Assembly (NCBI RefSeq): GCF_032191835.1
Contig: NC_083224.1
Coordinates: forward strand, 22,630,001-22,694,000
Source of the DNA: Heteronotia binoei
Taxonomy: Eukaryota
Length of the DNA stretch: 64,000 nucleotides
Reading direction: 5' to 3'
Part shown: one piece after another, positions 24,246 through 64,000 of the stretch
How positions within the stretch are numbered: the first letter of the stretch is position 1
How the letters are laid out: every line of letters begins with the position of its first letter
Program-made: the position numbers and the translations under genes
Notes under the pieces: generated by a model
The model's database searches: none
Told to the model about the DNA's origin: nothing
Seen by the model: only the letters and a program-made list of their open reading frames with translations

Positions 24246-24360
24246 ATGTGGGGAGGATCTGTGAAGGTGGAAGCAAAGTTCTCTGAAGCAGAAGGAGCTC
24301 CATCAGAGAAAGGTTAGAGGGCGCAGGCCCAGGAACATGCCCGAGAGGCCCTGTCAAGTG
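24246..24360 (+). CDS. Gene 2 115-bp exon carrying an in-frame TAG (24315-24317)
   Basis: Same splice sites as paralogs. GGT TAG AGG here versus GGT CAG AGG in genes 1 and 3. Confidence 0.85.
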
Positions 24361-44054: not shown

Positions 44055-44140
44055 CTTCCTTCCTTCCTTCCTTCCTTCCTTCCTTCCTTCCTTCCTTCCT
44101 TCCTTCCTTCCTTCCTTCCTTCCTTCCTTCCTTCCTTCCG
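44055..44140 (+). repeat. (CCTT)n microsatellite within a hAT-Charlie-like MITE (~43835-44243)
   Basis: Direct repeat visible. MITE ends GTTTGGCCACTCCTG. Confidence 0.85.
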
Positions 44141-44829
44141 TCCGTCTTGTGGCTCCTCAAACATCTGATGTTCATGTCTTGTGGCTCTCAGACATCTGTT
44201 TATTCTGTGTGGCTCTTACATGAAGTAAGTTTGGCCACTCCTGGTATATGATCCCCTATATTGAAATATTGCTGTCTCTCTGTTGTTTGGTTTGGTCTCT
44301 TGAAAAAAACCTGTAATAATAATATTTATGCCTTCATTAAAATATCAATTTAAAAATATGATGCCATGGAGCACCAAGCAGCCATTTCATTCCTCCCAAG
44401 GGATGGAGATCAGCAGCAATTCAGGGACATCTCCAGGGGTCATACACGCTTGGAAGGATTTGTGTGCACTTGTAGGAGCTCCTGGATACTTTTCTGGTGT
44501 GGACATTGTGGAAGAACTTCAGACTCCCCTCTGAGAAAGGGATGTGAAACGTCGGAGGTCGACCTTGCGGAGTCTTCTGGAAATGGGCTTTCAAATGAGA
44601 ATCCGATCATTTTCTAGACGAGCACTTTTGCACCAAGCCCTTTATTTATTGTTGGAATCAATTTTCCTCTGAGGATTTGTGCGCTGCTAGAATTGCTGCC
44701 AAGAGTTAACCCACCCTGTGAAACATTGTACTAATGAGGGGTGTTGATATCACTGTGTGTTGGTATTATTTTGGTATTATTGTGTTGGTAAATCTTGGTA
44801 TTATTGGTATGGGATGTTTTTTGTTATTA

Positions 44830-44953
44830 CAGGGGTGGCCCACGGCAGCTCTCCAGATGTTTTTTTTTGCCTACCACTCCCATCAGCCCCAGCCAGCATG
44901 CTGGTAGTGGTAGGCAAAAAAAACATCTGGAGAGCTGCCGTGGGCCACCTCTG
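44830..44953. mobile_element. Short palindromic hAT-type MITE
   Basis: CAGGGGTGGCCCACGGCAGCTCTCCAGATGTTTTTTTTGCCTAC...GTAGGCAAAAAAAACATCTGGAGAGCTGCCGTGGGCCACCTCTG. No TSD recognisable. Confidence 0.75.
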
Positions 44954-45579
44954 CAATTAGATTCCTGTGTGTGTCTTTTGGGTTGCCACGTGGAAGTGCA
45001 GTGAAGCCCCCTTGGCGACGGGGCTGCTGCGGGGGTCCTGCCCCACGGCCCCTCAGATCTCGGGGACGCGCGTGTGGGGCAGCAGGGAGATATGTTGCCA
45101 GATAAAATAAAACAGCAGACCTGTGGCACCTCAAAGACTAACAAAATTAATTCCAGCATGCATAAGTCTGAGGTTTCATCAGAGGCATATGTGAGTTCTG
45201 ACTCATGCAAGTTTATGCTGGAATAAAAGGTGTTAATCTTTAAGTAGTCAATAGACTCCTGTTTTTTGCTGCTGCAGACAAACACAGGTATCCATCTGGA
45301 ATTCTAGGCTATCGGATTAAGTCATGGTGGAAGTGGAGTTCCCAGCATTCATTTATTTATATTTTATTTAGTACATTTAATCTCATCCTTCCTCCAAGGA
45401 GTTTAGGGTGGCATACATTGTTCTCCCCTCCTCCATGTTGTCCTCACAACAAACCCTATGAGGTAAATTAGGTGGAGTGAGTCGTGACTGACCCAAGGTC
45501 AACAAGCAAACATCATGGCAGAGGATCTGAACCAAGATCTTGGAGATTCGTGTTTGACAGTCTAAATGACCCTCCTCCT

Positions 45580-46800
45580 TTCCCCGTCTTCCGCAGCCAG
45601 TCAGTCACAGAGGACAGAGAGCCCGATCCCACTACAGCTGCTTACTCAAAAGTCGGCTAGTCCGCTTTCGGTGTTTCCAACCCCCTTACCGGAAAGCGCA
45701 TCGGATTCATAGCAGCTTTAAAGAAGCCGCGTTGACACCCTTGTATAAATCCCGCTTCGGTCGCTTCTAAGAAGGCGTGCGCAAAACGGCAATACTAACG
45801 CCCTATGCATTTTATCGGGAGTAACTTTCACTGATTTCAACTGGATTTACTCCTCAGTGGGCCTCTCAGGATTGCAGCAGCCGCCTTACAGCCCGATCCT
45901 TATGCTCATCATAGGCATAATTAGCCTGTCCTTCAGCACTGTTGATCCCGATCCCAGGATCAGGCTGCGCAAGGGTCTTGTAAAGCGGCTCCACGCGCAT
46001 CTTTCTCCCCCAGCTCCCGGCAGCAATCCTGGGCGCACTTGGGAACCCCTCTTGTTTCCGAAGTTTCAGGAAACTGACTTGGTCTAAAGACCCCCCCCCC
46101 CTTAAAAAAAAAAAAAGGCGTGAAGGTTTTGTTTTTTAATAAAAGCATCAAGACCAACCGAAACAAGACAAAACCAGCGTGCAAACTTTCGACTTCTCCA
46201 GAAATCTTCAGCAAGCTGGATGTTGTTTTTGGGGGGGGGGAGGGAGGGGAGAAAAACTGGTATAGCAAGCCACGATTGTTAACGCTTGCAGACGCCAGAC
46301 GCGGCGCCGGTCAGCCTTGCTAGACAATGCTGGGTCGGGTCTTCTTCCAGAGGAGGCGCGTCCCGCCCGACCCCGGCCAGTCAGTCAGTCAGCCAGTCAG
46401 ACCGGCGGTTGGCGGTTGCCGTCCACTCCCCTCTCCCCGCCGCGGGAGAAGCCCGAGAAGGAGGCTGGTGCGCACACACGCCTTCTGAGGCGAGGGAGCG
46501 AGAGAGGAGAAAAAGCGACCCGCCTTTCCCGCGCTTTGCTTTCAACTCGATTGTGTGAGAGAGTGAGGGGGGGAAAAAGGGGGGGAAGGGAAGGGAACGA
46601 GGAGCCCCGTGCGTGCGCGCGCCCCTCCCCACCCCCCTTCTTCCGCCGTGCGCGCGCGCTCCCCCTCGCTGTCGGGCGCCGCGGGCGCCTCCATTCTTTT
46701 TCTCCCCCCCCTTTCAGCGCAGCAACGTCACGGCCATTGTTTGGGGGGCCCCCTTGCCAACGCGGGGACCCCCAGGCCTGGGGCGGACCGCCCTCCCCGC
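45580..46800. promoter_or_regulatory. CpG island carried inside element B
   Basis: High CpG density (CGCGCG runs, GC boxes), 5'-UTR-like composition. No counterpart upstream of gene 2. Confidence 0.6.
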
Positions 46801-46880
46801 CCCCCCCCTCCCTACGCGTCTGGCAAGCACACTTCTTCAGAATAGTCCAGGTCTTTGCATTGTGTAAGAAAGGAAATATA

Positions 46881-47169
46881 AGAGCCCCGTGGTGCAGAGT
46901 GGTAAAGCTGCAGTAGTGAAGTCGGAGCCCTCTGCTCACGACTTAAGTTCAATCCCAGCAAAAGCTGGTTCAGGTAGCCAGCTCCAGGTTGAGTCAGCCT
47001 TCCATCCTTCCAAGGTTGGTAAAATGAGTACCCAGCTTGCTGGGGGGAAAGTGTAGATGACTGGGGAAGGCAATGGCAAACCACCCCGTAAAAAGTTTGC
47101 CTTGAAAACAATGTTACCCCAGAGTTGAAAACGACTGGTGCTTGTGCAGGGGATTACCGTTACCTTTTA
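46881..47169 (+). mobile_element. Sauria-type SINE, full length
   Basis: Exact 15-bp TSD AAGAAAGGAAATATA (46866-80, 47170-84). Confidence 0.92.
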
Positions 47170-47921
47170 AAGAAAGGAAATATAGGTCTACACTTGTGCA
47201 AATTTCTTTGTAAGACTGATGGAGCTCCATTCCATGCGACTTAATATAGTGCCTTCCATGAAAATAGATTCACGTGGGTAGCCATGATTGCACATGAAAG
47301 CTTATTCCTTGAATAAACTTTTTTTGGTCTTAAAGGTGCCACTGGACTCAAACATTGTTCTGCCACTTCAGGCCAACATGACTGTCCACCTGAATCTACA
47401 TTATAGTCCACCACCTAATGGTTAAGCCCTTACTGATGCCTTTGTCCTGGGTTCCAGTTTACCTTCAGATGTATCCACTAGAGAGACCAATCCCCAGAAA
47501 CTGGAAGCCAAGCTCATAACATCCACAACATATTTTAAAAGGAGAAGAGGCAGGCACAGCAGGTGAGGGGCTTTCAGTCACTCCATTCAAGCTATGACCT
47601 TATCCTAAGGCTTCCTGCCAGTTATTGTGAACTGCCATCAATTGGTGTATTTGTTGCTTGAAAGGATCAAACAAGCATATCTTTAAAAACTTGATATGTA
47701 ATATAGCACAGGGACATTAATCCTGATCTACAAACTAAACAAGGATGCTTTTTCTGATCCACCAGGGTAATCCTTAGGTGTCTCTTCACCGTGATCAATA
47801 TAACTCCGTTCTCTTTTTCTTCCTGCCTTTCTGATGTCTTCCCCTCTCCCTCTTCACAGCCAAGTGAATAAGAGTGTCTTTGAAAGAGTGTCAGAGACAA
47901 CCCAAGAGGAAGGGGAAAGAG

Positions 47922-48353
47922 ATGGAAGAGAAGGACCCCAAAGACCCTGGAACTGGCCTTCAAAAAAAGATATCAAAAAAAGGTCGCCATCCCATCCAAG
48001 CAGCGAGTGGTGCTGAATTCCAGGAAAGAGCTGTGCCAGAGATCTTGGTTCAGGACACTGTGACCACAGATGTACGCAGCCGATGCTTCCGGCAGTTCTG
48101 TTACCAGGAGGCTGATGGACCCCGAGAGGTTTGCAGCCGGCTCCATGAACTTTGTAAGGACTGGCTGGAGCCAGAGAGGCGCACCAAGAAGGAGATTGTG
48201 GACCTGGTGATCCTGGAGCAGTTCCTGGCCATCCTGCCGCAGGAAGTGCAGGGCTGGGTGAGAGGATGCGGGCCAGAGACCAGTTCCCAGGCAGTGGCCC
48301 TGGCTGAAGGTTTCCTCCTGAATCAGGCAGAGGAGAAGAGGCAGGCACAGCAG
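47922..48353 (+). CDS. Gene 3 SCAN-domain exon (144 codons)
   Basis: Acceptor TTCACAG at 47859, ATG at 47922 ([10 protein letters not shown]), intact SCAN ([30 protein letters not shown]...LEQFLAILP), CAG|GTGAGG donor. Confidence 0.95.
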
Positions 48354-49399
48354 GTGAGGGGCTTTCAGTCACTCCACTCAAGCTATGACCTTATCCTAAG
48401 GCTTCCTGCCAGTTATTCCGCTGTGTGTGTGAACTGCCATCAAGTCACTTCAGCCTTATGGCAACCTTACAAATGTCCTCTCCTTAATAGCCTTGCTCAC
48501 ATCTTGCAGACCGAAGGCCCTTGTGGCTTACTTGATTGAGTCAGTGCTTCACGTGTTTGCTTTTCTCTTTTCCTGCTACCTTCAACTTCTCTTAGCATTA
48601 TTGTCTTTTCCAATGACTCCCGTCTTCTCATAATGTCACTAAAATACGATAGCCTCAGTCGAGTCGAGCTTCCAGGGAGAGGTAAGGCTTGATTTGATCT
48701 AAAATCCACTTATTTGTCTTTTTTGTGGCCTGTGGTATCTGTAGAAACACTCTCCTCCAACACCACAAAGAATCAACTTTCTTCCTCCCAGCTTTATTCC
48801 TTGTTCTGCTTTCACGCCCACACATAGTAATGGGGGAGTACTGTGGCACAAATTAACATGAGCTTGGTCACCAGTGACACATCCTTAAGAATCTTTTCCA
48901 GCTCCTTCCTGGCTGCCCTTCCCAGTCTCAGTCTCCTGATTTCTTGTTTGCAGTTTCCCTTTTGGTTGATGAAGTTAGAGTCCAGGGGCACCTTTAAGAC
49001 CAAGAAAGTTTTTTTTCAACGTATGACTTTTCCTGTGGAAGCATACTTATTCAGATACAATAAAATGGAAGGTAACCATTCAATCTTATAAACAGGACTG
49101 AAAAGTAAATTCGCATATAACATGATGAAGACATTTTGAGACAAAACAGGAACAACAAGCCAAGTCCACAGGGTCAACAGCTTTATGGATCCAGTTAAGG
49201 GGCAGCAATAGTGAAAGCAATAAATATGTCCAAATAGAAAATAAGGGTGTAAGAGACTCTTTTCTAATTGTGGTGAAATTAACCGAGATTCCTTTACAAC
49301 ACCCCATTCATCTTCCCGCAAGTGTGAAGGTAGTATACAGCATTTTTTCCTTTTTAGCTGGGGTGAGGTGCAGTATATTTCAAATTTCAATGGATTGAT

Positions 49400-51850
49400 G
49401 TTGGAGGAAGGAAACAGAAAATCTTGAACAACTTCAGTTTCTTCATAATCAGCATTCAATTTCTGTAATTCTTCACTAGTCATTATTTTTGCCTTCCTGG
49501 TCTTCAGCTGTAATCTTCCTTTAACATTTTCTGCTCTAGCCTTCATTAATAATGTTTTCAGGTCTTTACTACTTTCTGCCAGTAATGTGGTCTCATCTGC
49601 ATATCTCAGATTCTTAATCTTCCTTCCTACCATTTTCACTTCCCCATCTTCTCAATGTAATCCAGCTTTCCTTATTCTATGTTCTGCATATAGATTGATG
49701 AGACAGGGAGATAACATGCATCCTACTCTGGCACCAATTGGAAATCGTTCTATTTCTGCATATTCTAACAGTAATCTCTTGCCCAGGATATGTATCAATA
49801 CAATCAGATGTTGTGGCACACTCATTTCTTTTCAAACCAACCATACCTTTGCTTGATCCCAGCAGTCAAAAGAATGGATGAAGGCTGTGAATCACAAGCT
49901 GGTTTTCTTCTGAAATGCTCTCCTTTGCTCCATTAACCAATGTGAATTTGCAGTATGATCTCAGGTGCCTCTTCCTTCTGTAAATCCACGTGGAACATCT
50001 GGCATTTCTCTTTCATTATATGACCACAGGCCTTGTTGTAAATTGTTGAGCATCACTTGACTTGCATGAGGAATTAATGCAGTGGTCCGATAGTTGCTCA
50101 GTCTTTGATGTCTCTGTTTTTTGGAATTGGAATTTAATGTGCACATTTCCATTCTGTGGGCCATTATTTTGTTTCCATCTTTGTTAGATTCTTATTAAGA
50201 TTTTGATGGACTCCTTTTCTGTGGCTTGGAATACCTCCCCTGATATCCCATCTACTTATAAGAACATAAGAGAAGCCATATTGGATCAGGCCCATGGCCC
50301 ATCCAGTCCAACACTCTGTGTCACATAGTGGCCAAAAAAACCAACTGCCATCAGGAGGTCCACCAGTGGGTCCCGGACACTAGAAGCCCTCCCACTGTGC
50401 CCCCCCCCCAAGCACCAAGAATACAGAGCATCACTGCCCCAGACAGAAAGTTCCAACGATAAGCTGTGGCTAATAGCCACTGATGGACCTCTGCTCCATC
50501 TGCTTATCCAATCCCCTCTTGAAGCTGTCTATACTTGTAGCCGCCGCCACCTCCTGTGGCAGTGAATTCCACATGTTAATCATCCTTTGGGTGAAGAAGC
50601 ACTTCCTTTTATCAGTTCTAACCCAACTGCTTAGCAATTTCATTGAATGTCCACGAGTTCTCGTATTGTGAGAAAAGGAGAAAAGTACTTTCTCTCCCTT
50701 CTCTATCCCATGCATAATCTTGTAAACCTCTATTATGTCACCCCTCAGTCGACGTTTCTCCAAGCTAGAGCCCCAAGCGTTTTAACTTTTCTTCCTAGAG
50801 AAAGTGTTCCAACCCTTTAATCATTCTAGTTGCCCTTTTCTGGACTTTTCCCAATACTATAATAGCTTTTTTGAGGTGCAGTGACCAGAATTGTACACAA
50901 TATTCGAAATGAGGCTGCACTAGCGATTTATACAGGTGCATTATGATACTGACTGAGTTGTTTTCAATTCCCTTTGTAATAATTCCTAGTATGGCGTTGG
51001 CCTTTTTTATTCACAGACTGTCTCGACATTTACAGTGAGTTATCTACCAAAATCCCAAAATCTCTCTCTTGGTCAGACTCTGCCAGTTCACACCCCATCA
51101 ACTTGTATTTATAGTTAGGATTTTTGGCCCCAATGTGCATTACTTTGCATTTGACCATGTTAAACCTCATTTGCCATGTTGATGTTCACTCGTCCAGCCT
51201 CGACAGATCCCTTTGGAGTGCCTCACAATCCTCTCTGGTTCTTGCCACCCTGAACAATTTAGTGTCATCCACAAAGTTAGCCACTTCACTGCTTACTCCC
51301 AACTCCAGATCATTAATGAACATGTTAAAAAGCATCGGACCCAGTACTGAGCCCTGTGGCACCTCACTGCTTGCTATTCTCCACTGAGAAAATTGCCCAT
51401 TTATACTCACTCTTCGTTTCCTATTAATAAGCCAGTTTTTGATCCACAAGAGGACTTGTCCTTTTACTCCATGACTCTCGAGCTTACTAAGGAGCCTTTG
51501 ATGAGGAACTTTATCAAAAGCTTTCTGGAAGTCAAGGTAAACAACATCTATTGGGTTCCCTTTGTCCACATGTTTGTTCACCCCCTCAAAGAACTCTTAA
51601 CAGGTTAGTGAGACAAGATCTTCCCTTACAGAACCTATGCTGAATCTTCCTCAATCACTCCTGGTGATTTCTTTCTTCCAGTTCTTCTCAGTGCAGTTAA
51701 ACTTTCTAAAACTCTTCTTTGTTGTTCAACATATTCTTCTTGAAAGGTATCTGTCCTTCTTTCATATGTTTCTTATAATGCTTAGATATATTGCTCCTAT
51801 GTTTTCTTCGATATTTCTTTGATATTTCTTCTTCTAGATAATTCAATAGG
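49400..51850 (-). mobile_element. BovB LINE fragment split by a CR1 insertion
   Basis: Minus ORFs LSNYRTTALIPHASQVML and KIKNLRYADETTLLAES (RT YADD-like motif). Continues after 51645. Confidence 0.8.
50258..51645 (-). mobile_element. CR1 LINE 3' 1.4 kb
   Basis: VDKGNPIDVVYLDFQKAFDKVPHQRLLSKL...SEVPQGSVLGPMLFNMFINDL...FVDDTKL (RT) and LRGDIIEVYKIMHG...WNSLP. (ATAAGAAC)n tail at 50258. Confidence 0.95.
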
Positions 51851-51997
51851 CTGGGAAGAAAATCCAACCCTGGTTCTTGCCCCTGTGGCTATAGCAGCTC
51901 TGGTGGTCAGGGATGAGGAGTTTGGGAGTGGGTCAGGATCCATCCCTCCTCCCTGTTCCATTCCTTCTCTTACCCCTATCCCTTGCTGTTGTTTCAG

Positions 51998-52112
51998 ATG
52001 TGGGGAGGATCCGTGAAGGTGGAAGGAAAGTTCTCTGAGGCAGAAGGAGCTCTGTCAGAGGAAGGTCAGAGGGCACAGGCCCAGGAGCATGCCCGAGAGG
52101 CCCTGTCAAGTG
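51998..52112 (+). CDS. Gene 3 115-bp exon (open)
   Basis: TTTCAG|ATGTGG acceptor, AGTG|GTAAGG donor. MWGGSVKVEGKFSEAEGALSEEGQRAQAQEHAREALSS. Confidence 0.88.
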
Positions 52113-52725
52113 GTAAGGGGGCCTCCTGCCCAGAAGGGATTGGGACATGTAGTGAAGTTGTTGAGCAGAAGCTTCAGGACTGGAGAAAAGGAAAATACTT
52201 CTATGTAGAATGGAGTTCTGGGGGAAAGTGCCCTAGGATGTTGCGATGTCCACTCCCACTTTAAGGGGTAGTGTACAGATTCATGGAGACCAATTCCATT
52301 CATATTTACATTAATGGAAATAGGCATATCTCACCTTCCATCCACTGGAAGGACTCAAGGTGGCTGAAAAAAGAAAAGGGAGAGAAATCTGGGTGCAGCT
52401 ATGAGAGAAGGTGAATCAATAGAAATTCCACACTCCCCTGACCAGCATGGCCCCAAATGACCAAGGTCATCAGATCTCAGAAGCTAAGAATGGTCAGCCC
52501 TGATTAGTTTTTAGATTGGGAGACCTCCAAAGAAATTCAAGGTTGTTCTGGAGAGGCAGGCAATGACATACCACCTCTGCATCTCTCTTGCTTTGAAGAA
52601 CTGGAGTCCCCATAAGTCAGCTGTGACTTGATAGTGCTTTAGATGCACCAACCCACCATATTCTGGGGTAGGAAATCTCATAAGTTCCATTGCCACAAGC
52701 CAGTAATTTGGGCTCTGTGTCCCTG

Positions 52726-53555
52726 CGTAGCAGGAAAACCCCACTTTGCCAATTAAAGCAGGTGCAGAGACAAAGGAGGTCTGAGGCAAGATCAGGAGAA
52801 CAGCTTTTCTTTTATTTGAATAGACACGTGCGGGCCAGACTTCCTCGGCATCTGCCCAAAAGTGGAAGTCTGAGCCCCGATTACAGTTAGGCAAGGCTTT
52901 TTATACCATTTCTCAACATAGATGTTTACATTCATGGTGCTCTTATACACGTCCTGCACTGATGGCACAAGTTGTCCACTTCCGTACCTTTTAGCACTGA
53001 CCCATTCTGTGGTTTGCTGTTTTGTCAGCACAGACCGTTATCCACGTGTTAACATGCTAGGTGGTTTTCTTGCTGGTGCCTATGCGGCTTACAGTGTCAG
53101 CTTACTGTAACTTCTGCTTTTTCCCTATACTATTTGTGCTGTTTTGTTAAGAGACACATTTGATCATACTTAAAACTCTATTTGGCCTACAGCCTGATTA
53201 TTACTTAGTAGGCTGTGCTATATACTCATTACAATGGCTTTTGGCTGGTCATGCATGAATTGCTTAGGCAAATGCATATATATATATATCAGCTTTCACA
53301 GAGTCAAAAAAGGGGAAGTGAAAAGGAAACCCACAGGCCTTCAGTAAACACACAGCTTGGTTGCTAAGATGTCACAATCCACGTTCAGTTAACCGCTAGC
53401 TAGTTCCTCTTTTAGCAGCTGCTTCACACAAAGCACACAGAGGCATTTCTAAAAGCATTTCTGTTTGCCTTATTGTCCCTACGTTGCCATTAGCCCCCCC
53501 AGCCCCCTTAATATAGATTATTGATATCGCTATTGTCTCTTGGCCTGTTGCCACA
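52726..53555 (-). mobile_element. Solo LTR (830 bp), antisense in gene 3 intron 2
   Basis: 4-bp TSD CCTG (52722-25, 53556-59). Minus strand starts TGTGGCAACA. Minus-strand TATAAAA (52899-52905) and AATAAA (52811-16). Empty site in gene 2 (GTGACCCTGCTTTAAAGG, ~24965). Confidence 0.78.
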
Positions 53556-54195
53556 CCTGCTTAAAGGCTTTTCCAGGGCATCTGGGGGGCCACAGTCAGA
53601 AAGGGGATACTGGATTAGGGATGCCAGTCCGTGGACTAGATCCATGTGAGGGTTCAGGATCGAGCATGGTGTCATTTTCATGTCTTGTTTGGCTGAAAAC
53701 CTGGATGTGAACTCAAAGCATCAGCAGACACTCTGGAAACGCATTGGCAGTTCCCCAGAGTGTTAGCTGATGTGCTAAAATCATATGGATTTGGGGCAGG
53801 ATGTGATGGTGACGTGTCATGCGATGTGATTTCAGGTCACCTCCTTTTCTCCTGCCATTCCTGACTCCAGGATGGGTAAGAAGCCCCAGCAGGTGGGAGA
53901 ATGTCACCGCTAGACTTTTGTTCTGATCCAGCAGGGATGTTGCAACCATTTGAGCTCCAAGGGCACATTTCAAGTCTTACAGAAGTCTGAAATGCGTTGA
54001 CAGCATTTATAACCCCCCGAGGCTCATGGGTACCTTTCTTACAGTTGACTAAAAGTTATGACAACTTTTCTTGAGTGTAAAGAAGACAAAGTTTCAGAAT
54101 CCTAGGAAAGGGGATGCATAAGCAGGATTCAGACAAGCAAAGAACATCGAAATATGAGGCTAAAATCCTTCCTTCCAATTTTGTCTCCTTTTCAG

Positions 54196-54266
54196 GCAGT
54201 GAAGACATTTTGTTGAACCGTTTTCTTTGCAGAGAACTGGAAACAGCAGCTCCACCTCTGGTCCAG
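54196..54266 (+). CDS. Gene 3 71-bp exon (open)
   Basis: TTTTCAG acceptor, CCAG|GTAGGG donor. SEDILLNRFLCRELETAAPPLVQ. Confidence 0.88.
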
Positions 54267-54350
54267 GTAGGGGGGGAAATGAACGGGGAATAGTCAGGGC
54301 CTTTGCTCCATTCTCAGGGATGCTTTTGCTCCTGTTGTCTGAGGAAGAGA

Positions 54351-55049
54351 TGCAAATTGATAGCCAACTGCTGGAATGGCATCAATTCAACCTACGATGA
54401 GTGCTTGTGTTTTCTCTTAATAATGCAACTTATTCTTAGGAATGCAACTTATTCACAGTGGAAAAAAAATATGTATTACAGAAACTTGACATTCAAAACA
54501 ACATCATATAATACAAAAACCTTACATCTGCCTGAGGCTATACCACAGGAAAAAGACACTGCTTAAGTCATCTGAAAAAATATGGATGGTGTCTCTTCCT
54601 CAGTAACTTTTTGTATGGCATAGACACTCAGAATCTTGGCAGAATATTGTTGGTCTTAGCCTGCTTTATTTCCTATGGTTCACTGAAGAAGGGAGACCAA
54701 AATGAGACAATTATCCAGAAATCTTGTGTGAACTTGAGAATTTGTGAACTTTGGATTGAATTTCTGATTCAGCAACTTTGTACTTTGTATCTGTTAACTG
54801 AGTAATTTTGATGTTGTAACTCTGTATTTTAGACTTACATCCCTTGAATGACACAAAACTTGTAAAGTTATTGATTTTTCAGGCAAATGTAAGATTTTTG
54901 TATCATGAAAATGTTGTCTTGAATGACCAGTTTCTGTAATCTCTATATTGTTCACTATGAATAAGTTACGTTATTAAGAGAAAACACAGGCACTCATGGT
55001 AGTTTGAATAACTTTATTTTGATGCCATTCCATCAGTTGGCTTTCAAAA
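54351..55049. mobile_element. Unclassified 699-bp insertion with ~170-180-bp imperfect terminal inverted repeats and 14-bp TSD
   Basis: TSD GTCTGAGGAAGAGA (54337-50, 55050-63). Arms 54357-54535 and 54879-55047 are reverse complements. Paralogous introns are ~207 bp with one copy of the TSD-like sequence. Confidence 0.85.
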
Positions 55050-55192
55050 GTCTGAGGAAGAGACACTCTGAATGGCAGTGCTGTTACAGATACCGAGTTC
55101 TCCCTCTTCCACCCTCACAAAATACCGTGGTCGAGAGGGTCAGATATCTTCCTGGCATGGTCTCTGATGAGGGAATCTGCTTTTTCTTTCAG

Positions 55193-56386
55193 TCTCCATG
55201 TTCCTTTGAGAAGCCTTTTGAATGCTTAGAGTGTGGGAAGAGGTTCAGTCACAGAAGCACTCTTCACCACCATCAAAATATCCATACAGGGGAGAAGCCT
55301 TTTGAATGCTCAGAGTGTGGGAAGAGTTTCAGTCACAGTAGCAATCTTCAAAAACATCTAAGAACCCACACAGGGGAGAAGCCTTTTGAATGCTCAGAGT
55401 GTGGAAAGAGGTTCAGTGACAGAAGTACTCTTCAGCGTCATCAGAGAATCCATACAGGGAAGAAGCCTTTTGAATGCTCAGAATGTGGGAAGAGATTCAT
55501 TCGGAGTGGCCATCTTCAAAGTCATCTCCGAGCCCACACAGGGGAGAAGCCTTTTGAATGCTCAGAGTGTGGGAAGAGATTCAGTCAGAGTGGCCATCTT
55601 CGACAGCATCAAAGAACCCACACAGGGGAGAAGTCTTTTGAATGCTCAGAGTGTGGGAAGAGGTTCAGTGACAAGAGCACTCTTCACCACCATCAAAGTA
55701 TCCATACAGGGGAGAAGCCTTTTGAATGTTCAGAGTGTGGGAAGAGATTCAGCCACAGTAGCAGTCTTCAAAAACATCTAAGAACCCACACAGGGGAGAA
55801 GCCTTTTGAATGCTCAGAGTGCGGGAAGAGATTCAGTCAGAATGGCAGTCTTCAACTGCATCAAAGAACCCACACAGGGGAGAAGCCTTTTGAATGCTCA
55901 GAGTGTGGGAAGAGATTCAGTCACAGAAGCACTCTTCACCACCATCAAAGTATCCATACAGGGGAGAAGCCTTTTGAATGCTCAGAGTGTGGGAAAAGAT
56001 TCAGTCACAATAGCAGTCTTCAGAAACATCTAAGAATCCATAGAGGGGATAAGGCCTTTGAATGCTCAGAGTGTGGAAAGAAACTTAGGGACAATAGCAG
56101 TCTTCAAAAACATCAAAGAATCCATACAGGGGAGAAGCCTTTTGAATGCTCAGAGTGTGGGAAGGGATTCAGTCAGAGTGGCAGTCTTCAACTGCATCAA
56201 AGAACCCACACAGGGGAGAAGCCTTTTGAATGCTCAGAGTGTGGGAAGAGATTCAGTCAGAGTGGCAGTCTTCAAAAACATCAAAGAACCCACACAGGAG
56301 AGAAGCCTTTTGAATGCTCAGAGTGTGGGAAGAGATTCAGTCGGAGTGGCAGTCTTCAGATGCATCAAGGAACCCACACAGGGTAG
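55193..56386 (+). CDS. Gene 3 chimeric terminal exon: KRAB-A acceptor + SPCSFE fused to 14 C2H2 fingers
   Basis: The KRAB-exon acceptor context (GATGAGGGAATCTGCTTTTTCTTTCAG|TCTCCA) is followed after 6 codons by KPFEC. Open to TAG at 56384-86. Confidence 0.9.
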
Positions 56387-56640
<254 letters not shown>

Positions 56641-58036
56641 GCCTAGGAAGGCATATTGAACTCTGTTGTTACTAGGATATGACATGAATTTTATGGACTT
56701 TACTAGTAATAAGGCCCATTGTAGGGAGATATACAGTGGATGCTAGAAATTTGCTATAGGTGGGTTTATGGCCTTGGCATGGGGCTGTGGGTGGGGGGAA
56801 AAGATAGAAAGAGGCAAGGTATGTCAAGAAGGCAGTAATTTGGAAGGGAAATGGAGAAAGTGGGGAAATGTGGGAAAGGTTATCAGAGAAGAGGGGTATC
56901 TTGAGAAAGAAGGGATGGGGGGCAAAAGAGATGGGGGTAGATTGCTTTCCATCTCTTCCCCCCTGCCTGCATCCTCTGTAAAGAAAAAGGGCAGTTTTTC
57001 TTCACAGTGGGGTCCAAAGCATTCTTCTCTTCCCTCTTTTGATCTGCACAACAACCCTCTGGGACAGGTTAGGCTGAAAGTCTGTGACTGGTCTGAAATC
57101 ACCCAGTCAGCTTCCACAGCAAGAGGCTGGGTCTGGCAGACCCTGCTCTGAAGTGCCAGCTGCCACATCATACTGGCTGTCATAGGTGGGAGACTTCAGC
57201 AGGTTATAATGATTCAGAGTGTACCAGTTTCTCTCAGGGAAATGATATCTGCCGATCTGGAGAGAAGTTGTAGTTCTGAGTGATCTCCAGGCCTCACCTG
57301 GAGATTGGCAACAATGGTTTCCTAGGAGGAGATGCCTGGTTTGGGATGGAGTCTATGGCATTGTTCTTGTCTGAGTTCCCACTCTTCCTCAAACCCTACC
57401 CTCTCCAGGCTTCACCCCTCAAATCTCCAAGAATTTCCAAATCTAGAGTTGGCAACCTTCTGTTTCTCAGCCAAACATCAACCTACCTTTATCTGACCCC
57501 TGACTTCAGTTTTCCATCTCCTCTCCCCACCCTAGTCTTTCTCCACATTGGGGACCAAAGCAGTTTACATAATTTTTCTCTCGCCTTTTTGATCTGCACA
57601 ACCCTGTGAGGTAGGTTATGTTGAAAGTCTGTGACTGGTCTGAAATCACCCAGTCAGCTTCCACAGTGGGAATCCGGGTCTGGCAGACCCCGCCCTAAAG
57701 TGCTGGCTGTTGTGTCACAGTGGCTGTCAAAGTGATTGTGGGCTGAAACCATATGTAATACTTCCACTTAAATGTACTTTAAATAGGATACTTTTAAGAG
57801 ATGAACTGGGCTCTATTTCTTACATTTGCTAAATAACTGCAGCACCATCCCCTTCAATTATATATCAATAAAATCATGCCAGAAACTTATTTCCCTGAGG
57901 ATCTAATGGAGCACCATTTATGAATCTTTACTATAGCTCTGTGTCTTATACCTTTAAGAAAAAGCTATCCAAGACACAGCTGCATGGAGTTACCTAAATT
58001 AGTTTTCTTTAAGTAGAATTTTCAAGCTTTTTGGAG

Positions 58037-58318
58037 AGAGCATTTTGCCAGTAAAATTTAGAAGGCTTTTGCATTTAGTTAGAAGAGGTTCAGGATTGGC
58101 TTGCTTCTAAATTAAACACTTATGTGGTATTGAGAGCATTTTGCCATCAAAATTCATTAGGCTTTTGCATCTGGTTAGAAAAGAGATTCAGAAATAGCTG
58201 GCTCCTAATGTAAATGTAATGCAGAGAGCATTTGGCCAGCCAAATCCAGAAGGCTTTTGCATCTGATTAGGGAAGAGGTTTAGAACTGGCTTGCTCCTAG
58301 TGTAGAATGTAGATTCAG
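58037..58318. repeat. Three diverged ~95-bp tandem repeats
   Basis: AGAGCATTT.GCCA...AGGCTTTTGCAT...GTTAG..AAGAG.TT.AG recurs at 58037, 58133 and 58225. Confidence 0.75.
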
Positions 58319-58367
58319 ATTTGCATTAGAACATGCACAGAGTACCATTTACATTTGCACTAACTCT

Positions 58368-58783
58368 CCCTCTCTCGGCTTGACTTCGCGAACGAAGATT
58401 TAAGAAAGGTGCAGTAGTCCACGTCTGCTGCAGGCTCACTGGTGACTGACAAGACCAATGAACAGGCAAGTCCGGCCACAGTGGCTGCAGGAAAAAGTCT
58501 GATTTGAGGTTGGTGCTGTAGCAGTGCGATTCTTCCTCAATCTCCTTTTGTCCTCAAGACCAGCTATGCGTGCGTTCTCAAAGGAAGAGACAGCCTGGTG
58601 GATGGTGTGCCTCCATGCTTTGCGATCTGAGGCTAGGTCAGACCACTGGTGATGGTTGATGCAACAGGTACCAAGGGATTTCTTCAAGGAGTCCTTGTAC
58701 CTCTTCTTTGGTGCCCCTCTATTTCGATGGCCGGTGGAAAGTTCGCCATACAGGGCAATCTTGGGAAGGCGGTGGTTTTCCAT
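58368..58783 (-). mobile_element. RTE-type LINE 3' end, 5'-truncated
   Basis: Near-identical to 22240-22657. Exact 10-bp TSD CACTAACTCT (58358-67, 58784-93). Confidence 0.92.
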
Positions 58784-59789
58784 CACTAACTCTAATCATA
58801 GAACATATGTGCACTAACTGATCACAGAACCTGCCTTAATATACATGACATGGGCTCATGGTGGTCTTTGAGAACAAAGAGGGAAAGTACATTGCATACC
58901 ACAAAGGCCTTTCTCCACTAAGAATATGTTATCTGGGTATGTCCTGTAAACATCTTCTAGAAGAAAGGAGATAATTTTCCTACCACCAGAAAAAGCCTAG
59001 CTTGAAGGTCAGAACACTCCCCACAGTAGAAATTTCACCTATTGATACATTCTCTGGAACCGAGCTGGAAATCTAAAACAAAGAACCCCTTGGCCATATG
59101 CACATCCCTAGAAGAACACCTAACCGCAGAGTTCCGTCCAGATGCTAGATGCCAGGAAGACAGGAGATGGGGAGTACAGAACAAAGAAATCCCCAAGGAA
59201 TTACTTCATCCTGAAAGAGACGGACTTTAAGCCAGTGAGATACCACAAAAGGCCTGTAATGCTTTAGGGCCTCCTAAAATCATTAGTAAATTTTGACCTT
59301 GGGATGCCCAGAGTCAGGCCAAGAATCTAGTGTTTTCTTAAATTGTAACTTAGACCTGGGGCCTGGAGTGTTAGTGTTTACATAAGCCTAGGCAGGGTTG
59401 GTATGTAACTTTGACAAATTGGGTTCAGCTGTGAGGGGTGCCAGGAAGAGAGAGCTTGTTTAATTGAGAGAAGATATTTTTCCACTGCAGGGGAGAGGTT
59501 TGGGATTAATCTAGATCACTCTGTGACTAAGGAGTGGATTTAACATCGCAGGTGAAATTGATTGCAAGGGCCCTGGCAATTAATGGGACCTGGCTATAAA
59601 GAATAGGTATTCCAAGCCCAATTTGAGTCTGACGCCTCTCAGACTTCCTTCATGCCTCAGTGTGTTGTTCTGCTGTTAAACTGAACTCGGAGTGATGGCA
59701 GTATTTTTGTGTTGTAACCTTGGTGTACCTGGCTGAACTTTAATATTATTATTATTAATACCCTACAGTCCTATTCTGACTGAAGTTCT

Positions 59790-60300
59790 ATATTTATTTA
59801 TTATTTATTACATTTGACTTATATCCCGCCCTCTCCGCAAGCGGACTCGGGGCGGCTCACAGTATCATATCTACACAGTTAAACCAATAAAATATATAAA
59901 ACCATAATTTACATTTACATTTTCCAGTTTAAAAACATATTACAATTTTTAAAACCATTATATAGTGCTGAATCCATACATTATAAGCGGCATTAAAAAA
60001 TTCCAAGCAGTGATCACCGGCATTCTGTGTGATGTCCGGTGGCAGCCATCTTTTCGTCAAGCATCGAAGGCCTGCTTGAACAACTCGGTCTTACAGGCCC
60101 TGCGGAATGCAGACAGATCCCGCAGGGCCCATATGGCTTCTGGAAGGGCATTCCAAAGCTCTGGTGCTGCCACCGAAAAAGCCCTAGATCTTGTCAAGCA
60201 TAACCTGGCTTCTTTTGGTCTGGGAGCAGAGAGTAGGTTTTTTGCCCCTGAACGCAGTGCTCTCTGGGGATATATGGAGAAAGGCGGTCCCGTAGATATG
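59790..60300 (-). mobile_element. L2 LINE 3' end
   Basis: RAFSVAAPELWNALPEAIWALRDLSAFRRACKTELFKQAF, plus (ATTT)n/TATATCCCGCC tail. Confidence 0.9.
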
Positions 60301-60311
60301 CAGGTCCCTGA

Positions 60312-60491
60312 CCAGTTCTTATAGCCAGCTTCAAGAGGGGATTGGATAAAAATACAGAGCAGAGGTCCATCAGTGGTTATTAGCCGCAGTGTGTGTGTGT
60401 ATGTATTTTGGCCACTGTGTGATACAGAGTGTTGGACTGGATGGGCCATTGGCCTGATCCAACATGGCTTCTCTTATATTCTTATGTTCTT
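60312..60491 (+). mobile_element. CR1 3' end
   Basis: GCTTCAAGAGGGGATTGGATAA...TGTTGGACTGGATGGGCCATTGGCCTGATCCAACATGGCTTCTCTTATATTCTTATGTTCTTA. Confidence 0.88.
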
Positions 60492-61227
60492 AAGTTGACT
60501 ACGTCTGGCAACTATGCTAAATGTTAGTAAGGCTGGTTAAGCATAGGTCTGTTACTTTCATGCCTTCCTATAACCTTAATGGTTAATTCTTCTTTGCACA
60601 CAATAAAATATCTCTTATCAGTTAAACTGTGTGGAGTCTTTGGCTTCAAGTCTCCAAAGGCTAAATTCAGTGTCTTAGACTGGGGCTACCTACTGAGATA
60701 AGAATTCTTTACTGAGAGCCTTCCTTGCAGGGTGATAATTAGTCTCCCAGGAAGGGCTGGAGTTTTTCTTTGAGACTCTGGCCTTGGGAACCTGTGGGGT
60801 GGTGGCAGCAATAGAGACACAGGCTGGACTCCTGGGGGCTAGCAAGGGTCCTTGGACACTGGAGCCTAGCCTAACTGGGACTCCCTGCCAGCCAGTAGTG
60901 GGAGCTGGCTGCTCACAGGGGGTGGAATTCCTTTACAAGGCCAAAAGTGAGGATTTTTGTAACCAATCAACTAGACCTGCTTTGTTATCCAAATTGTATA
61001 AATGTTGGGGCTTTGTGAAGATGGGTTTGAGGAAAAACACAGGAAGGATGTTGGTACAGAAAGTGTGGCTTTTCCTCCTGCCACTGGTGGTAATAAAGGA
61101 ATCTGAATCAACTCACTTGGATCTCTTGGTGTTGAGTCTCTTAAATTGGGCTGGAGGGGCTCAACTTTTGGCACTGATGTTGTTTGCAACACTAGTATAA
61201 ACACCTGAGGCTGAGAGGGATAGAGCA

Positions 61228-61503
61228 TGGGTGGCTAAACTTGCTTAACATAAGAGCTGCATAGAATAAACATCAGATGTTTGAGAGTTGGAACGAAAGA
61301 GAACAGATGGGAGGGAGGGAAAGGTGGAAAGAAAGGAACTTTAAATGTATTCTCCAAGCCACGGGCTGGCTTGCCATGGGGAAGTTATTTGAAGAGAGAA
61401 ATGCTTTAACCAGCTGATGGGGTTGGTGGGGGGGAGGTTTGGAGAGCCACACAATATGTCTGAAAGAACCACATGTAGCTCCCGAACTGCAGTTTGGCCA
61501 GCC
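61228..61503. mobile_element. hAT-Charlie-like MITE
   Basis: GGGTGGCTAAACTTGCTTAACATAAGAGC..CATAGAATAAACATCAGATGTTTGAG...GTTTGGCCAGCCCTG. Same family as ~14400 and ~43835. Confidence 0.7.
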
Positions 61504-61519
61504 CTGTTCAAGGCCACGT

Positions 61520-61961
61520 TATGTCAACAAATTATGCCAACAAATCTAGAAAACGCAACAGTGGCCACAGGATTGGAAAAGATCAGTTTATATTCCAATC
61601 CCAAAGAAGGGTAATGCCAAGGAATGTTCAAACTATCACACCATTGCACTCATTTCTCATGAGTTAACATGACCTTGCTGGCATAGGTCATGTTAACGAT
61701 CCTACAAGCTAGGCTTCAGCAGTATGTCGATCGGGAACTACCAGAAATTCGAGCTGGGTTTTGGAGAGGCAGAGGAACTAGAGATCAAATTGCCAACATT
61801 CACTGGATTAAGGAGAAAGCGCGGGAGTATCAGAAAAACGTCTATTTCTGCTTCATTGACTATGCTAAAGCCTTTGATTGTGTGGATCACAACAAACTGT
61901 GGCAAGTCCTTAAAGAGATGGGAGTACCTGACCACCTCACATGTCTCCTGAGAAACCTGTA
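61520..61961 (+). mobile_element. BovB LINE fragment, well preserved, cut by the Maverick insertion
   Basis: ILQARLQQYVDRELPEIRAGFWRGRGTRDQIANIHWIKEKAREYQKNVYFCFIDYAKAFDCVDHNKLWQVLKEMGVPDHLTCLLRNL ends abruptly at AACCTGTA. Confidence 0.95.
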
Positions 61962-62192
61962 AGTAGTAAATAGCCCCCCACGCATTTTTAAGGAAGGGGG
62001 CGTGGCCAGTGACATCACCAGAAGCTGTGTCAACCCATGCATAATTAATGAAGGGGGCATGGCCAGTGACATCACATCCGGTGACGTCACCGGAAACTCT
62101 CATCAGGTCATGACCCCAATGATGTCACACCCAGGTCATGACCCCACCCCCATGTGACCTAGCCCCCATCAATCACCATTTATGCCCCACCA

Positions 62193-62442
62193 TGACGTAG
62201 CTACCCCGCATATTTAATTAATTAAGCACCTCCAGGAAATGACCTTACTGACTCACACCACGTGATGCAGCCAGGCCAATCAGCATCTATGTCCACCCCG
62301 CTGTGACGTAGCTACCCCGCATATTTAATTAATTAAGCACCTCCTCCAGGAAATGACCTTACTGACTCACACCACGTGGCGTAGCCAGGCCAATCAGCAT
62401 CTATGTCCACCCCCGCTGTGACGTAGCAACCCTGCATATTAA
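62193..62442 (+). promoter_or_regulatory. 2.2 x ~111-bp tandem repeat in the Maverick terminal region, rich in TF motifs
   Basis: Units start at 62193, 62304 and 62419. Each full unit contains TGACGT, TGACTCA, CACGTG, GGCCAATCAG and TTAATTAATTAA. Confidence 0.7.
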
Positions 62443-62732
62443 TCGAGCAGGCTGGAAATCACACGTGTAGCCCCTTCCCCTGCCCCCTTCTCTACTGCCA
62501 CCCACTGCAGTGTCATTGAACTTCAGCCTGTGGCACCCCACCCCGGAAATTGGGGCCATCACTGAGAAGGCCTGAGTAGGTCTGTGTGACCCCTCTAACA
62601 ACATGCCCAGTCACCCCTGGCCAATAGCAAATGGGGCTGGGGTCCACCCCCACCCAGCCCACCCCCACCAGGTTTTTTTAGAAAAGGAGCCATTTGTGCT
62701 TGAACACACGTGCACAGGCTCTTGCTGAGAAC

Positions 62733-63385
62733 ATGAAAACTTCGGCCAGGTCCAAGGTATTCACCACACCACTGCCATTGGGGAGGCCTAGCTTCAACAA
62801 CATTGGCGCTTCTGGCAGGCAGCTGGTATTTGACATTCCTTCTGCATCTACTACGTACTTTGGCGGCGTCCCTATGCGCTGTACTTACCGAATCTCCAAT
62901 GAGGCTGCGGAGATGCCCGAGCACTCCGCAACTCCAGAGGTAAATGGCTGAACAGAAAACACAATGATGCCTGCATGGGGAAGCCAGCATGATGTGTGGA
63001 TGGCGCTTTCCAGCCGCCCTGAAGATGAGATGGACTTGGGAATGCCCAACCCGCTGTGGTGTATTTACCGGGACCCTGCTGAGCAGTTTGAAGATGATGA
63101 TGAAACTCAAGAGGGGGGTGAAAATGAAGAGGTTTTAGATGAATCCACGGAACAAGAGAATGTGGTTGTCAAACTCACAGGTAATCAGGTAAAGCAGTGT
63201 TTGTGAATGGGTGTGTAATGAAGGCGGGTGATGGGCTTTTTCACTGAGCTGCTTTTTTTTGACAGCTTGATGAGAATTTTATCCAGGCTTTCAGTAACCT
63301 TCGCATCGGTAACCCTGTTGACATGAATCTAACGTGTGTCATGTTTCTGTACCAAAGTTACCCAGTGCGACAAGAAGAAGAATAA
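62733..63385 (+). pseudogene. Candidate spliced Maverick accessory gene (62733-63188 + 63266-63385) with one internal TGA
   Basis: ORFs 62694..62951 and 62964..63206 share a frame, separated only by TGA 62949-51. CAG|GTAAAG donor, TTTTTTTTGACAG acceptor, open second exon to TAA 63383-85, AATAAA at 63420. Confidence 0.45.
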
Positions 63386-63474
63386 AATTAATAATAAGCA
63401 GAAGAGGTAGTTCTGATACAATAAAGACATTTGTTTTATAACCTTGTGTGATCATTTCTGAGTTAAGCGGGGCA

Positions 63475-64000
63475 ATGATGGAGGCAGTGGATGAAGAGGA
63501 GGCCTTAAGACACATGTATTATACACCCGGAAAAGCAGGGAGCTTTGGCGGGGTGAGGCCTCTCTTCCAGGCAGCCAAAAAGCAGTGTAAAGCTCTCACT
63601 CAAAATCATGTTACTAACTGGCTTTCAGAGCAAGATGCTTACACATTGCATAAGCAAGCCTGCGTCCGCTTTAAGAGAAACAAGACCATGGTTTCTGGTC
63701 TCGATGCCCAGTGGCAGGAGGATTTAGTTCATATGCAAAAATTTTCCAAAAATAATGACAGCTACATTTTAACAGTTGTTGACATATTGTCTAAATATAC
63801 CTGAGCTTTGGCCTTAAAAGACAAGACGGGGAGGGTGTCGAAAGCCCTTAAGGAAATTTTCAAACAAGGTAGAATACCTGCCAAGCTTCAGACTGATGCA
63901 GGTAAAGAGTTTCTAAACCAGTCTGTAAGCAGCGTGTTAAAGCAACACGGAGTCCACCACTTTTACACCCATAATGAAGTCAAAGCAGCTATTGTGGAGC
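63475..64000 (+). pseudogene. Polinton/Maverick retroviral-type (DDE) integrase, one nonsense codon, truncated by window end
   Basis: YYTPGKAGSFGG..L, WLSEQDAYTLHK, WQEDLVHMQ, LTVVDILSKYT* then in the same frame ALALKDKTG...KLQTDAGKEFLN...HFYTHNEVKAAIVE. TGA at 63802-04 replaces the usual Trp. Confidence 0.92.

What the first reader, a model, noticed from the sequence alone, without database searches (positions are those of the whole stretch)
55150..55260. Birth of a KRAB-less SCAN-ZNF gene by a single in-frame deletion
Seen: gene 3 keeps the KRAB-A acceptor and codons TCT CCA TGT TCC TTT GAG, then continues AAG CCT TTT GAA TGC. The junction uses GAG shared by KRAB FE(E) and linker (G)EKP, a 3-nt microhomology. 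The rest of KRAB, the 120-bp exon, two introns (several kb in the paralogs) and the N-terminal fingers are gone. All four exons stay in frame: 144+62+397 = 603 aa, SCAN + 14 fingers. Established: KRAB-A recruits TRIM28/KAP1, while SCAN mediates dimerisation. Inference: this protein could bind DNA and heterodimerise with its SCAN-KRAB siblings without repressing, acting as a dominant-negative or activator. It is a snapshot of the ZKSCAN-to-ZSCAN transition.
Basis: partly seen in the sequence, partly recalled or inferred. Interest (0 to 1): 0.75.

Follow-up and report, generated by a model that had tools for sequence, protein, structure and literature searches.

The report
KRAB-less SCAN zinc-finger gene by deletion
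One of three neighbouring gecko-type SCAN-KRAB zinc-finger genes lost its repressor (KRAB) domain through a clean in-frame genomic deletion and still reads as an intact 603-codon gene, a neat but ordinary example of a known way in which this gene family changes.

Summary
The window holds three tandem + strand SCAN-(KRAB)-C2H2 paralogues. Gene 3 shares with genes 1 and 2 the intron end, the acceptor and the first 18 nt of the KRAB-A exon (55193-55210). It then runs straight into a zinc-finger linker (AAGCCTTTTGAATGC) with 3 nt of microhomology (GAG).

The rest of KRAB-A, the 120-bp exon, both introns and the pre-finger region (at least 5.1-5.7 kb in the paralogues) are absent from 44000-64000. 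Four exons with canonical splice sites give a 603-codon ORF: an intact SCAN domain, 6 KRAB residues and 14 intact fingers.

- Constraint is suggested but not shown. SCAN core dN/dS is 0.21, and the two later stop codons lie only behind the TAG (p about 0.02-0.04).
- Expression and raw-read support could not be tested, because no run of the source species was served.
- The age of the deletion is unknown.
- Sibling gene 2 has a nonsense codon just after its SCAN exon.

Loss of KRAB from SCAN-KRAB genes by deletion or degeneration is already a published model, and SCAN-only ZNFs are common in lizards. This is a new member of a known kind, and the dominant-negative idea is untested speculation. 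The scan had earlier noted KRAB loss by degeneration on other pieces of this genome.

The parts
47922..48353 (+). Gene 3 SCAN exon, coding part (ATG to donor CAG|GTGAGG), 144 codons
   Evidence: Pfam SCAN E 1.8e-36, profile positions 2-89 of 90. It aligns to solved SCAN dimers ZNF24 3LHR and ZNF174 1Y7Q. dN/dS against gene 2 is 0.35 for the exon and 0.21 for the core.
51998..52112 (+). Gene 3 second coding exon (MWGGSVKVEG...), 115 nt, ends in phase 1
   Evidence: tblastn with Heteronotia binoei paralogue proteins. Acceptor tgtttcag and donor GTAAGG are identical in all three genes.
54196..54266 (+). Gene 3 third coding exon (..SEDILLNRFLCRELETAAPPLVQ), 71 nt, donor CAG|GTAGGG
   Evidence: The annotated paralogue P0044 reads ...PLVQ|SPFSFEDVAV, which is the same exon join.
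54337..55063 (.). About 0.7-kb insertion in the last intron of gene 3. The intron is about 210 nt in genes 1 and 2.
Evidence: There is a homology gap between 54350 and 50050-side match start at 55050 relative to both paralogues.
55050..55192 (+). End of the intron before KRAB-A, with polypyrimidine tract and AG acceptor, kept from the ancestor
   Evidence: 79% identity to gene 1 and 82% to gene 2. The last 40 nt or so are nearly identical.
55193..55210 (+). KRAB-A remnant: 6 codons, SPCSFE. GAG at 55208-55210 is the 3-nt microhomology at the junction.
   Evidence: Alignment A1. No KRAB hit in Pfam.
55211..56383 (+). Linker plus 14 C2H2 fingers (F1 at 55217, period 84 nt), read in frame with the KRAB remnant
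   Evidence: Pfam zf-C2H2 finds 14 stretches, E 1.6e-96. All Zn ligands are intact. F1 is 94-96% identical to F6, F9 and F15 of the same gene.
56384..56386 (+). Stop codon TAG, a GAG>TAG change in a TGEKP linker
   Evidence: Gene 2 has GAG at the aligned place.
56387..56641 (+). Former coding tail (fingers F15 and F16 plus a degenerate end), now behind the stop, with further in-frame stops at 56525 and 56567
   Evidence: Gap-free alignment to the coding tail of gene 2 with 30 differences in 255 nt.
46100..46999 (.). CpG island about 1 kb upstream of the SCAN exon; possible promoter, not shown to be one
   Evidence: GC 0.52-0.69 and CpG observed/expected 0.85-0.98.

Best explanation
Gene 3 is a tandem duplicate of a SCAN-KRAB-C2H2 gene and is closest to gene 2. 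A genomic deletion of at least 5 kb joined codon 6 of the KRAB-A exon to a finger linker.

The join has 3 nt of microhomology and no filler. That fits end joining or a replication template switch (inferred). It is in frame, and the KRAB-A acceptor is kept. The old KRAB-A exon and the finger exon therefore became one terminal exon, spliced to the unchanged upstream exons.

The predicted product is SCAN, a 62-residue spacer, 6 KRAB residues and 14 fingers. By what is established for these domains it could bind DNA and dimerise through SCAN, but it could not recruit TRIM28 through KRAB.

Shown here: the junction, the missing parts, the intact ORF and the intact splice sites. Inferred: that the gene is still expressed and under selection, which is likely but unproven. 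Not addressed here: any dominant-negative or activating role.
For: - Junction and flanking homology.
- KRAB is present in genes 1 and 2 and absent in gene 3.
- No remnant of the deleted parts in 44000-64000.
- 603-codon ORF over four exons, with six canonical splice sites identical to the paralogues.
- The same exon join (PLVQ|SPFSFE) occurs in an annotated H. binoei paralogue.
- SCAN core dN/dS is 0.21 at dS 0.16 against gene 2.
- All 14 fingers keep their Zn ligands.
- The two later stop codons both lie in the 84-codon tail behind the TAG and none in the 603 codons before it. Under gene-wide neutrality p is about 0.016, or 0.03-0.04 against the finger exon alone.
- A strong CpG island lies upstream.
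- An assembler cannot collapse two sequences that share only 3 nt, and the left flank is 18-21% diverged from both paralogues, so it is not a chimera of them.
Against: - There is no RNA evidence and there are no reads of the source species. The best run held 7% of the words. The runs laid were relatives whose contigs continue into a normal KRAB-A at 55210.
- No protein in the public collection carries the junction, and none matches gene 3 or gene 1 at about 100%. The locus is therefore unannotated or absent from the collection.
- The deletion cannot be dated. The constraint signals may come from the time before it, and an in-frame join has a 1 in 3 chance.
- The cluster shows decay. Gene 2 has a nonsense codon and the array of gene 3 is truncated.
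- dN/dS of the two spacer exons is 0.6-0.8.
- SCAN amino-acid changes are no fewer on the gene 3 branch than on the gene 2 branch, 10 against 7.
- Gene conversion among fingers could keep the array open without selection on the protein.
Confidence: 0.6

Rival explanations
1. Gene 3 is a young, non-functional relic in a birth-and-death cluster. The deletion (or the linker TAG) ended its useful life. The open frame is what remains after too little time for decay, helped by the 1 in 3 chance of an in-frame join and by gene conversion from intact fingers.
For: - Neighbour gene 2 carries an in-frame TAG at 24315-24317.
- The tail of gene 3 has three stops.
- Finger 11 has F>L at the conserved hydrophobic position, and two linkers are degenerate.
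- No annotated protein and no transcript evidence.
- Spacer exons have dN/dS of 0.6-0.8.
- There is no slowdown on the gene 3 SCAN branch relative to gene 2.
Against: - 603 codons and six splice sites are intact at about 12-18% divergence from the nearest paralogue.
- The later stops are confined to the region behind the TAG (p about 0.02-0.04).
- SCAN core dN/dS is 0.21.
- The CpG island upstream is not decayed.
Confidence: 0.3
2. The junction is real, but it is not a simple intragenic deletion. One possibility is that it arose during the tandem duplication itself, by a template switch from KRAB-A into a finger linker. Another is a larger deletion that fused the 5' half of one tandem copy to the finger array of the next copy. 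In either case the array was later rebuilt by internal duplications.
For: - Finger F1, which abuts the junction, belongs to a finger type specific to gene 3 (F1, F6, F9 and F15 are 94-96% identical). This type is much younger than the split of genes 2 and 3.
- The arrays are collinear with gene 2 only over the last three fingers.
- The locus shows another small templated copy: 87 nt at 99% identity, 47540-47626 against 48331-48417.
Against: Both halves of gene 3 have gene 2 as nearest relative, at similar divergence. A single deletion in one duplicate is therefore the simplest account. Nothing in one genome separates these variants.
Confidence: 0.25
3. Assembly artefact: a chimeric join or a collapse produced the junction.
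For: Zinc-finger arrays are hard to assemble. A 99% identical 87-nt local copy lies nearby.
Against: The two sides share only 3 nt, so there is no repeat to collapse across. The left flank is unique sequence, 79-82% identical to the paralogues. The join is clean, in frame and at a finger boundary.
Confidence: 0.04

Closest known systems
[quoted passage not shown] 2008, PMC2443715)
   Same: A SCAN-KRAB-ZNF gene becomes a SCAN-ZNF gene by losing KRAB within a tandem cluster, and the exon-intron frame of the SCAN-KRAB type remains recognisable.
   Different: The cases described there are mostly degenerated KRAB exons or KRAB left inside an intron, in mammals. Here the loss is in a squamate lineage-specific cluster. 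The breakpoint is resolved to the base, and the KRAB-A acceptor is reused as the acceptor of the finger exon.
Lizard SCAN-ZNF and SCAN-KRAB-ZNF expansions (Liu, Chang and Stubbs 2014, PMC3971581: 89 SCAN and 240 SCAN-KRAB models in Anolis carolinensis)
   Same: The same gene family and lineage-specific tandem expansion. SCAN-only members are common beside SCAN-KRAB members.
   Different: That survey counts domain architectures and does not give the events that convert one into the other. This locus shows one such event.
Predicted KRAB-less SCAN-ZNF proteins of geckos (P0083 Heteronotia binoei, P0118 Sphaerodactylus townsendi, P0068 Gekko japonicus)
   Same: SCAN plus a finger array without KRAB, in close relatives.
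   Different: In those proteins the spacer exon joins directly to the normal pre-finger region (DDQRNEE...). KRAB is missing as a whole exon, and the degenerate N-terminal fingers are kept. None has the SFE|KPFEC join.
Vestigial KRAB-A exons in SCAN-ZNF genes of this same genome (earlier notes s1-323889 and s1-318591)
   Same: Loss of KRAB function within SCAN-ZNF genes of the same genome.
   Different: Those are old, worn-down exons kept in frame (degeneration). Gene 3 lost the sequence outright by deletion, and its paralogues still have a canonical KRAB-A (VMLENY and EW motifs present).
Solved SCAN domain dimers (ZNF24 3LHR, ZNF174 1Y7Q, PEG3 4BHX, MZF1 2FI2, ZSCAN10 4E6S)
   Same: The gene 3 SCAN exon aligns over the whole domain, E 2e-24 to 5e-16.
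   Different: The match is by sequence only. The partner choice of the gecko domain is unknown.

Membership tests
SCAN-domain C2H2 zinc-finger gene without KRAB (ZSCAN-type architecture) | SCAN domain present and complete | tested here: met
   Pfam PF02023 E 1.8e-36, profile positions 2-89 of 90. Aligns to solved SCAN dimers.
SCAN-domain C2H2 zinc-finger gene without KRAB (ZSCAN-type architecture) | Tandem C2H2 fingers 3' of SCAN in the same reading frame | tested here: met
   14 fingers with intact C-C-H-H. The ORF of 603 codons over four exons is open.
SCAN-domain C2H2 zinc-finger gene without KRAB (ZSCAN-type architecture) | No KRAB box | tested here: met
   No Pfam KRAB hit at E 0.01 or below. 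Only 6 codons of KRAB-A remain, and there is no KRAB body elsewhere in the locus.
SCAN-domain C2H2 zinc-finger gene without KRAB (ZSCAN-type architecture) | Transcribed and spliced as modelled | not testable with these tools
   No run of the source species was served. The runs laid were relatives.
SCAN-KRAB C2H2 zinc-finger gene (ZKSCAN-type architecture) | KRAB-A box between SCAN and the fingers | tested here: not met
   Gene 3 has none. Genes 1 and 2 have full KRAB-A, profile positions 2-42 of 42, E 2e-20 and 6e-20.
Unprocessed pseudogene | Frame-breaking or nonsense changes, or lost splice sites, within the former coding region | tested here: inconclusive
   None in the 603 codons or the six splice sites. 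Relative to gene 2 the array ends early at a linker TAG, and the tail behind it holds two more stops.
Unprocessed pseudogene | Neutral evolution (dN/dS near 1) | tested here: inconclusive
   The SCAN core gives 0.21 and the spacer exons 0.6-0.8, but only pairwise against gene 2, and not split into time before and after the deletion.
Deletion by end joining with microhomology | Short microhomology at the junction, no filler, both parental sequences identifiable | tested here: met
   GAG is shared and there are no inserted bases. The parental KRAB-A and linker sequences are seen in the paralogues. Three nt is only weak evidence, since about 5% of random junctions have that much or more (own arithmetic).

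The most novel reading that the evidence does not exclude
The KRAB-less protein is expressed and kept by selection as a SCAN-dimerising partner without a repressor domain, which modulates SCAN-KRAB paralogues of the same cluster. Its array was rebuilt after the deletion around a finger type specific to gene 3 (HRSTLHHHQ; F1, F6, F9), giving it a new DNA specificity.
Probability: 0.15. Interest if true: 0.45.

Novelty: new member of a known kind. Interest (0 to 1): 0.25.

Why it matters
If the gene is live, it gives a base-pair-resolved example of how a SCAN-KRAB repressor gene turns into a SCAN-only factor in one step. The parental architecture is still present next door. That would allow a direct comparison of a KRAB-containing and a KRAB-less paralogue in a squamate, for example by reporter repression, TRIM28 binding and SCAN partner choice.

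It does not change the current picture of the family. Effector-domain loss by deletion is already part of the accepted birth-and-death model, and SCAN-only genes are numerous in lizards.

Tried and rejected
1. Raw-read and RNA tests. The one run search found no holder above 7% of the words. The four runs laid are relatives. Unique introns are uncovered, and only finger and exon-like parts are matched at 88-95%. Contigs that reach the KRAB-A acceptor continue into a normal KRAB-A. This neither confirms nor refutes the junction and says nothing on expression.

2. Looking for the protein or its orthologue. The finger exons of gene 3 and gene 1 found no match near 100% (best 72-78%, Heteronotia binoei and Euleptes paralogues). 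A search scored on the first 42 residues found no protein with the junction words.

3. Placing the 3' breakpoint in the ancestral array. The finger-by-finger identity matrices show no diagonal except for the last three fingers, so this was given up.

4. Relative-rate test on SCAN with 14 gecko outgroups. It gave 10 against 7 derived residues, which has no power.

The exons were searched one by one by reference, and the joined reading frame was only counted inside local scripts.

6. The large representative-protein search, structure prediction and fold search were not used, since the domains are unambiguous.

Full report
**What is in the window.**
Three + strand paralogues of one zinc-finger family lie in tandem. 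Their long finger ORFs are at 8296-10398 (gene 1, 23 fingers), 31057-33393 (gene 2, 23 fingers) and 55004-56386 (gene 3). Pfam finds a SCAN domain upstream of genes 2 and 3 (E about 2e-36). It finds a full KRAB-A box upstream of genes 1 and 2 (E 2e-20 and 6e-20), but none in gene 3. The SCAN exon of gene 1 lies before the start of the window.

The closest public proteins are predicted SCAN-KRAB zinc-finger proteins of geckos (Heteronotia binoei, Sphaerodactylus, Euleptes, Paroedura) at 65-83% identity. No protein matches at about 100%.

**Gene models.**
Gecko paralogue proteins laid on the window by tblastn, together with the splice sites read from the DNA, give the family plan:
- a SCAN exon;
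- a 115-nt exon (MWGG...);
- a 71-nt exon (...PLVQ);
- a 127-nt KRAB-A exon ([12 protein letters not shown]...);
- a 120-nt exon (AADVEETAGEF...);
- a last exon holding a spacer, a few degenerate fingers and the canonical array.

Gene 3 has the first three of these at 47922-48353, 51998-52112 and 54196-54266. Their acceptors and donors are the same as in its paralogues. Its last exon starts at 55193.

**The junction.**
The alignment of 55040-55330 with the KRAB-A regions of genes 1 and 2 shows homology through the intron end, the acceptor and 18 nt of the exon (TCT CCA TGT TCC TTT GAG; one mismatch, TTT>TGT). The paralogues then go on with GAG/GAA GTG GCT GTG TAT TTC, while gene 3 goes on with AAG CCT TTT GAA TGC, a finger linker and finger.

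GAG occurs in both parents and the neighbouring bases differ, so the microhomology is 3 nt. By my arithmetic about 5% of random joins have that much or more, so it fits end joining but proves little.

BLASTN finds no other trace of the KRAB-A body, the 120-bp exon, the two introns or the pre-finger region anywhere in 44000-64000. In paralogue coordinates at least 5.1 kb (gene 1) or 5.7 kb (gene 2) is missing.

The join keeps the frame. The four exons give 603 codons without a stop, then TAG at 56384-56386.

1. The stop is a GAG>TAG change in a TGEKP linker. Behind it the sequence stays collinear, without gaps, with the coding tail of gene 2 (30 differences in 255 nt). It holds two more in-frame stops, at 56525 and 56567.
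2. Gene 2, the nearest SCAN-KRAB sibling, has an in-frame TAG (24315-24317) 23 codons after its SCAN exon. It is either a young pseudogene or encodes a SCAN-only stub.
3. The finger next to the junction (F1) belongs to a finger type found only in gene 3. F1, F6, F9 and F15 are 94-96% identical, while gene 3 differs from gene 2 by 12-18% elsewhere. The array was therefore remodelled late, and the original 3' breakpoint cannot be placed.
4. The last intron carries an insertion of about 0.7 kb. Both splice sites are untouched.

**Is it a live gene?**
In favour:
- The ORF and all six splice sites are intact.
- All 14 fingers keep their zinc ligands.
- SCAN core dN/dS is 0.21 at dS 0.16 against gene 2.
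- A strong CpG island lies about 1 kb upstream (observed/expected 0.85-0.98).
- The two later stops both fall in the 84-codon tail and none in the 603 codons before the TAG. If the whole gene had drifted since the TAG arose, weighting codons by their chance of mutating to a stop gives p of about 0.016, or 0.03-0.04 against the finger exon alone.

Against:
- These are small numbers, and finger-to-finger conversion could also keep the array open.
- dN/dS is pairwise and cannot be split into time before and after the deletion.
- The SCAN branch of gene 3 is no shorter than that of gene 2 (10 against 7 derived residues).
- The spacer exons give 0.6-0.8.
- There is no annotation and no transcript evidence.

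I put about 0.6 on an intact, probably expressed KRAB-less gene, about 0.3 on a young relic, and a few per cent on an artefact.

**Artefact.**
Same-species reads were not available. The best run held 7% of the sampled words. The four runs laid are relatives. They leave the unique introns uncovered, and their contigs that reach 55147-55210 run on into GAGGTGGCCGTGTATTTCAC, a normal KRAB-A.

This is no test of the junction. Still, a collapse needs a repeat, and the two sides share 3 nt. The left flank is unique sequence, 79-82% identical to the paralogues. An artefact is unlikely.

**How it would work.**
From established knowledge of the domains, SCAN forms homo- and heterodimers, and gene 3 aligns over the whole domain to solved SCAN dimers. 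KRAB-A recruits TRIM28 in mammals. For lizard KRAB this has been called likely but untested (PMC3971581). The KRAB-A of genes 1 and 2 keeps the EW and VMLENY motifs. With only six KRAB residues left, gene 3 protein cannot use that route.

Whether it acts as a decoy partner, an activator or nothing is inference without data.

**Comparison with what is known.**
Tadepally et al. [quoted passage not shown] Liu et al. (PMC3971581) counted 89 SCAN-only and 240 SCAN-KRAB models in Anolis. Predicted KRAB-less SCAN proteins exist in geckos but lack the KRAB exon as a whole. None has this join. Earlier notes of this scan describe worn-down KRAB-A exons elsewhere in this genome.

Gene 3 is therefore a new, well-resolved member of a known kind of event.

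**Limits of procedure.**
The spliced model was never sent to a search tool. Exons were searched one at a time by reference, and the joined frame was only counted in local scripts.

Noticed in passing
window 24315-24317: Gene 2, the closest SCAN-KRAB paralogue, has an in-frame TAG where genes 1 and 3 have CAG. It lies in the 115-nt exon, 23 codons after the SCAN exon. Gene 2 is therefore a young pseudogene or encodes a SCAN-only stub, although its KRAB-A exon and its 23 fingers are still open.
   Followed up: partly
window 1396-1510 and about 1909-2001: Gene 1 carries a tandem second copy of the 115-nt exon region. The second copy has an in-frame stop.
   Followed up: no
window 47540-47626 and 48331-48417: There is an 87-nt direct repeat at 99% identity. 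A copy of the last 23 nt of the gene 3 SCAN exon, its donor and 64 nt of intron sits about 300 nt upstream of the same exon. The copy is absent from gene 2. It looks like a recent templated insertion and adds a spare donor site in the presumed 5' intron.
   Followed up: partly
window 54337-55063: An insertion of about 0.7 kb in the last intron of gene 3, which is about 210 nt long in genes 1 and 2. It lies 70 nt after the donor and 130 nt before the acceptor.
   Followed up: no
window 46100-46999: A strong CpG island (35 CpG in 300 nt, observed/expected about 1) lies about 1 kb upstream of the gene 3 SCAN exon and is much stronger than anything upstream of gene 2. Earlier notes ascribe it to a transposon-borne fragment.
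   Followed up: partly
window 55217-56476: Fingers F1, F6, F9 and F15 of gene 3 form a young gene-specific finger type (HRSTLHHHQ, 94-96% identical). F2 and F7 are 95% identical, and F8 and F12 are 96% identical. These are recent block duplications or conversions inside the array. F15 lies behind the stop codon.
   Followed up: partly
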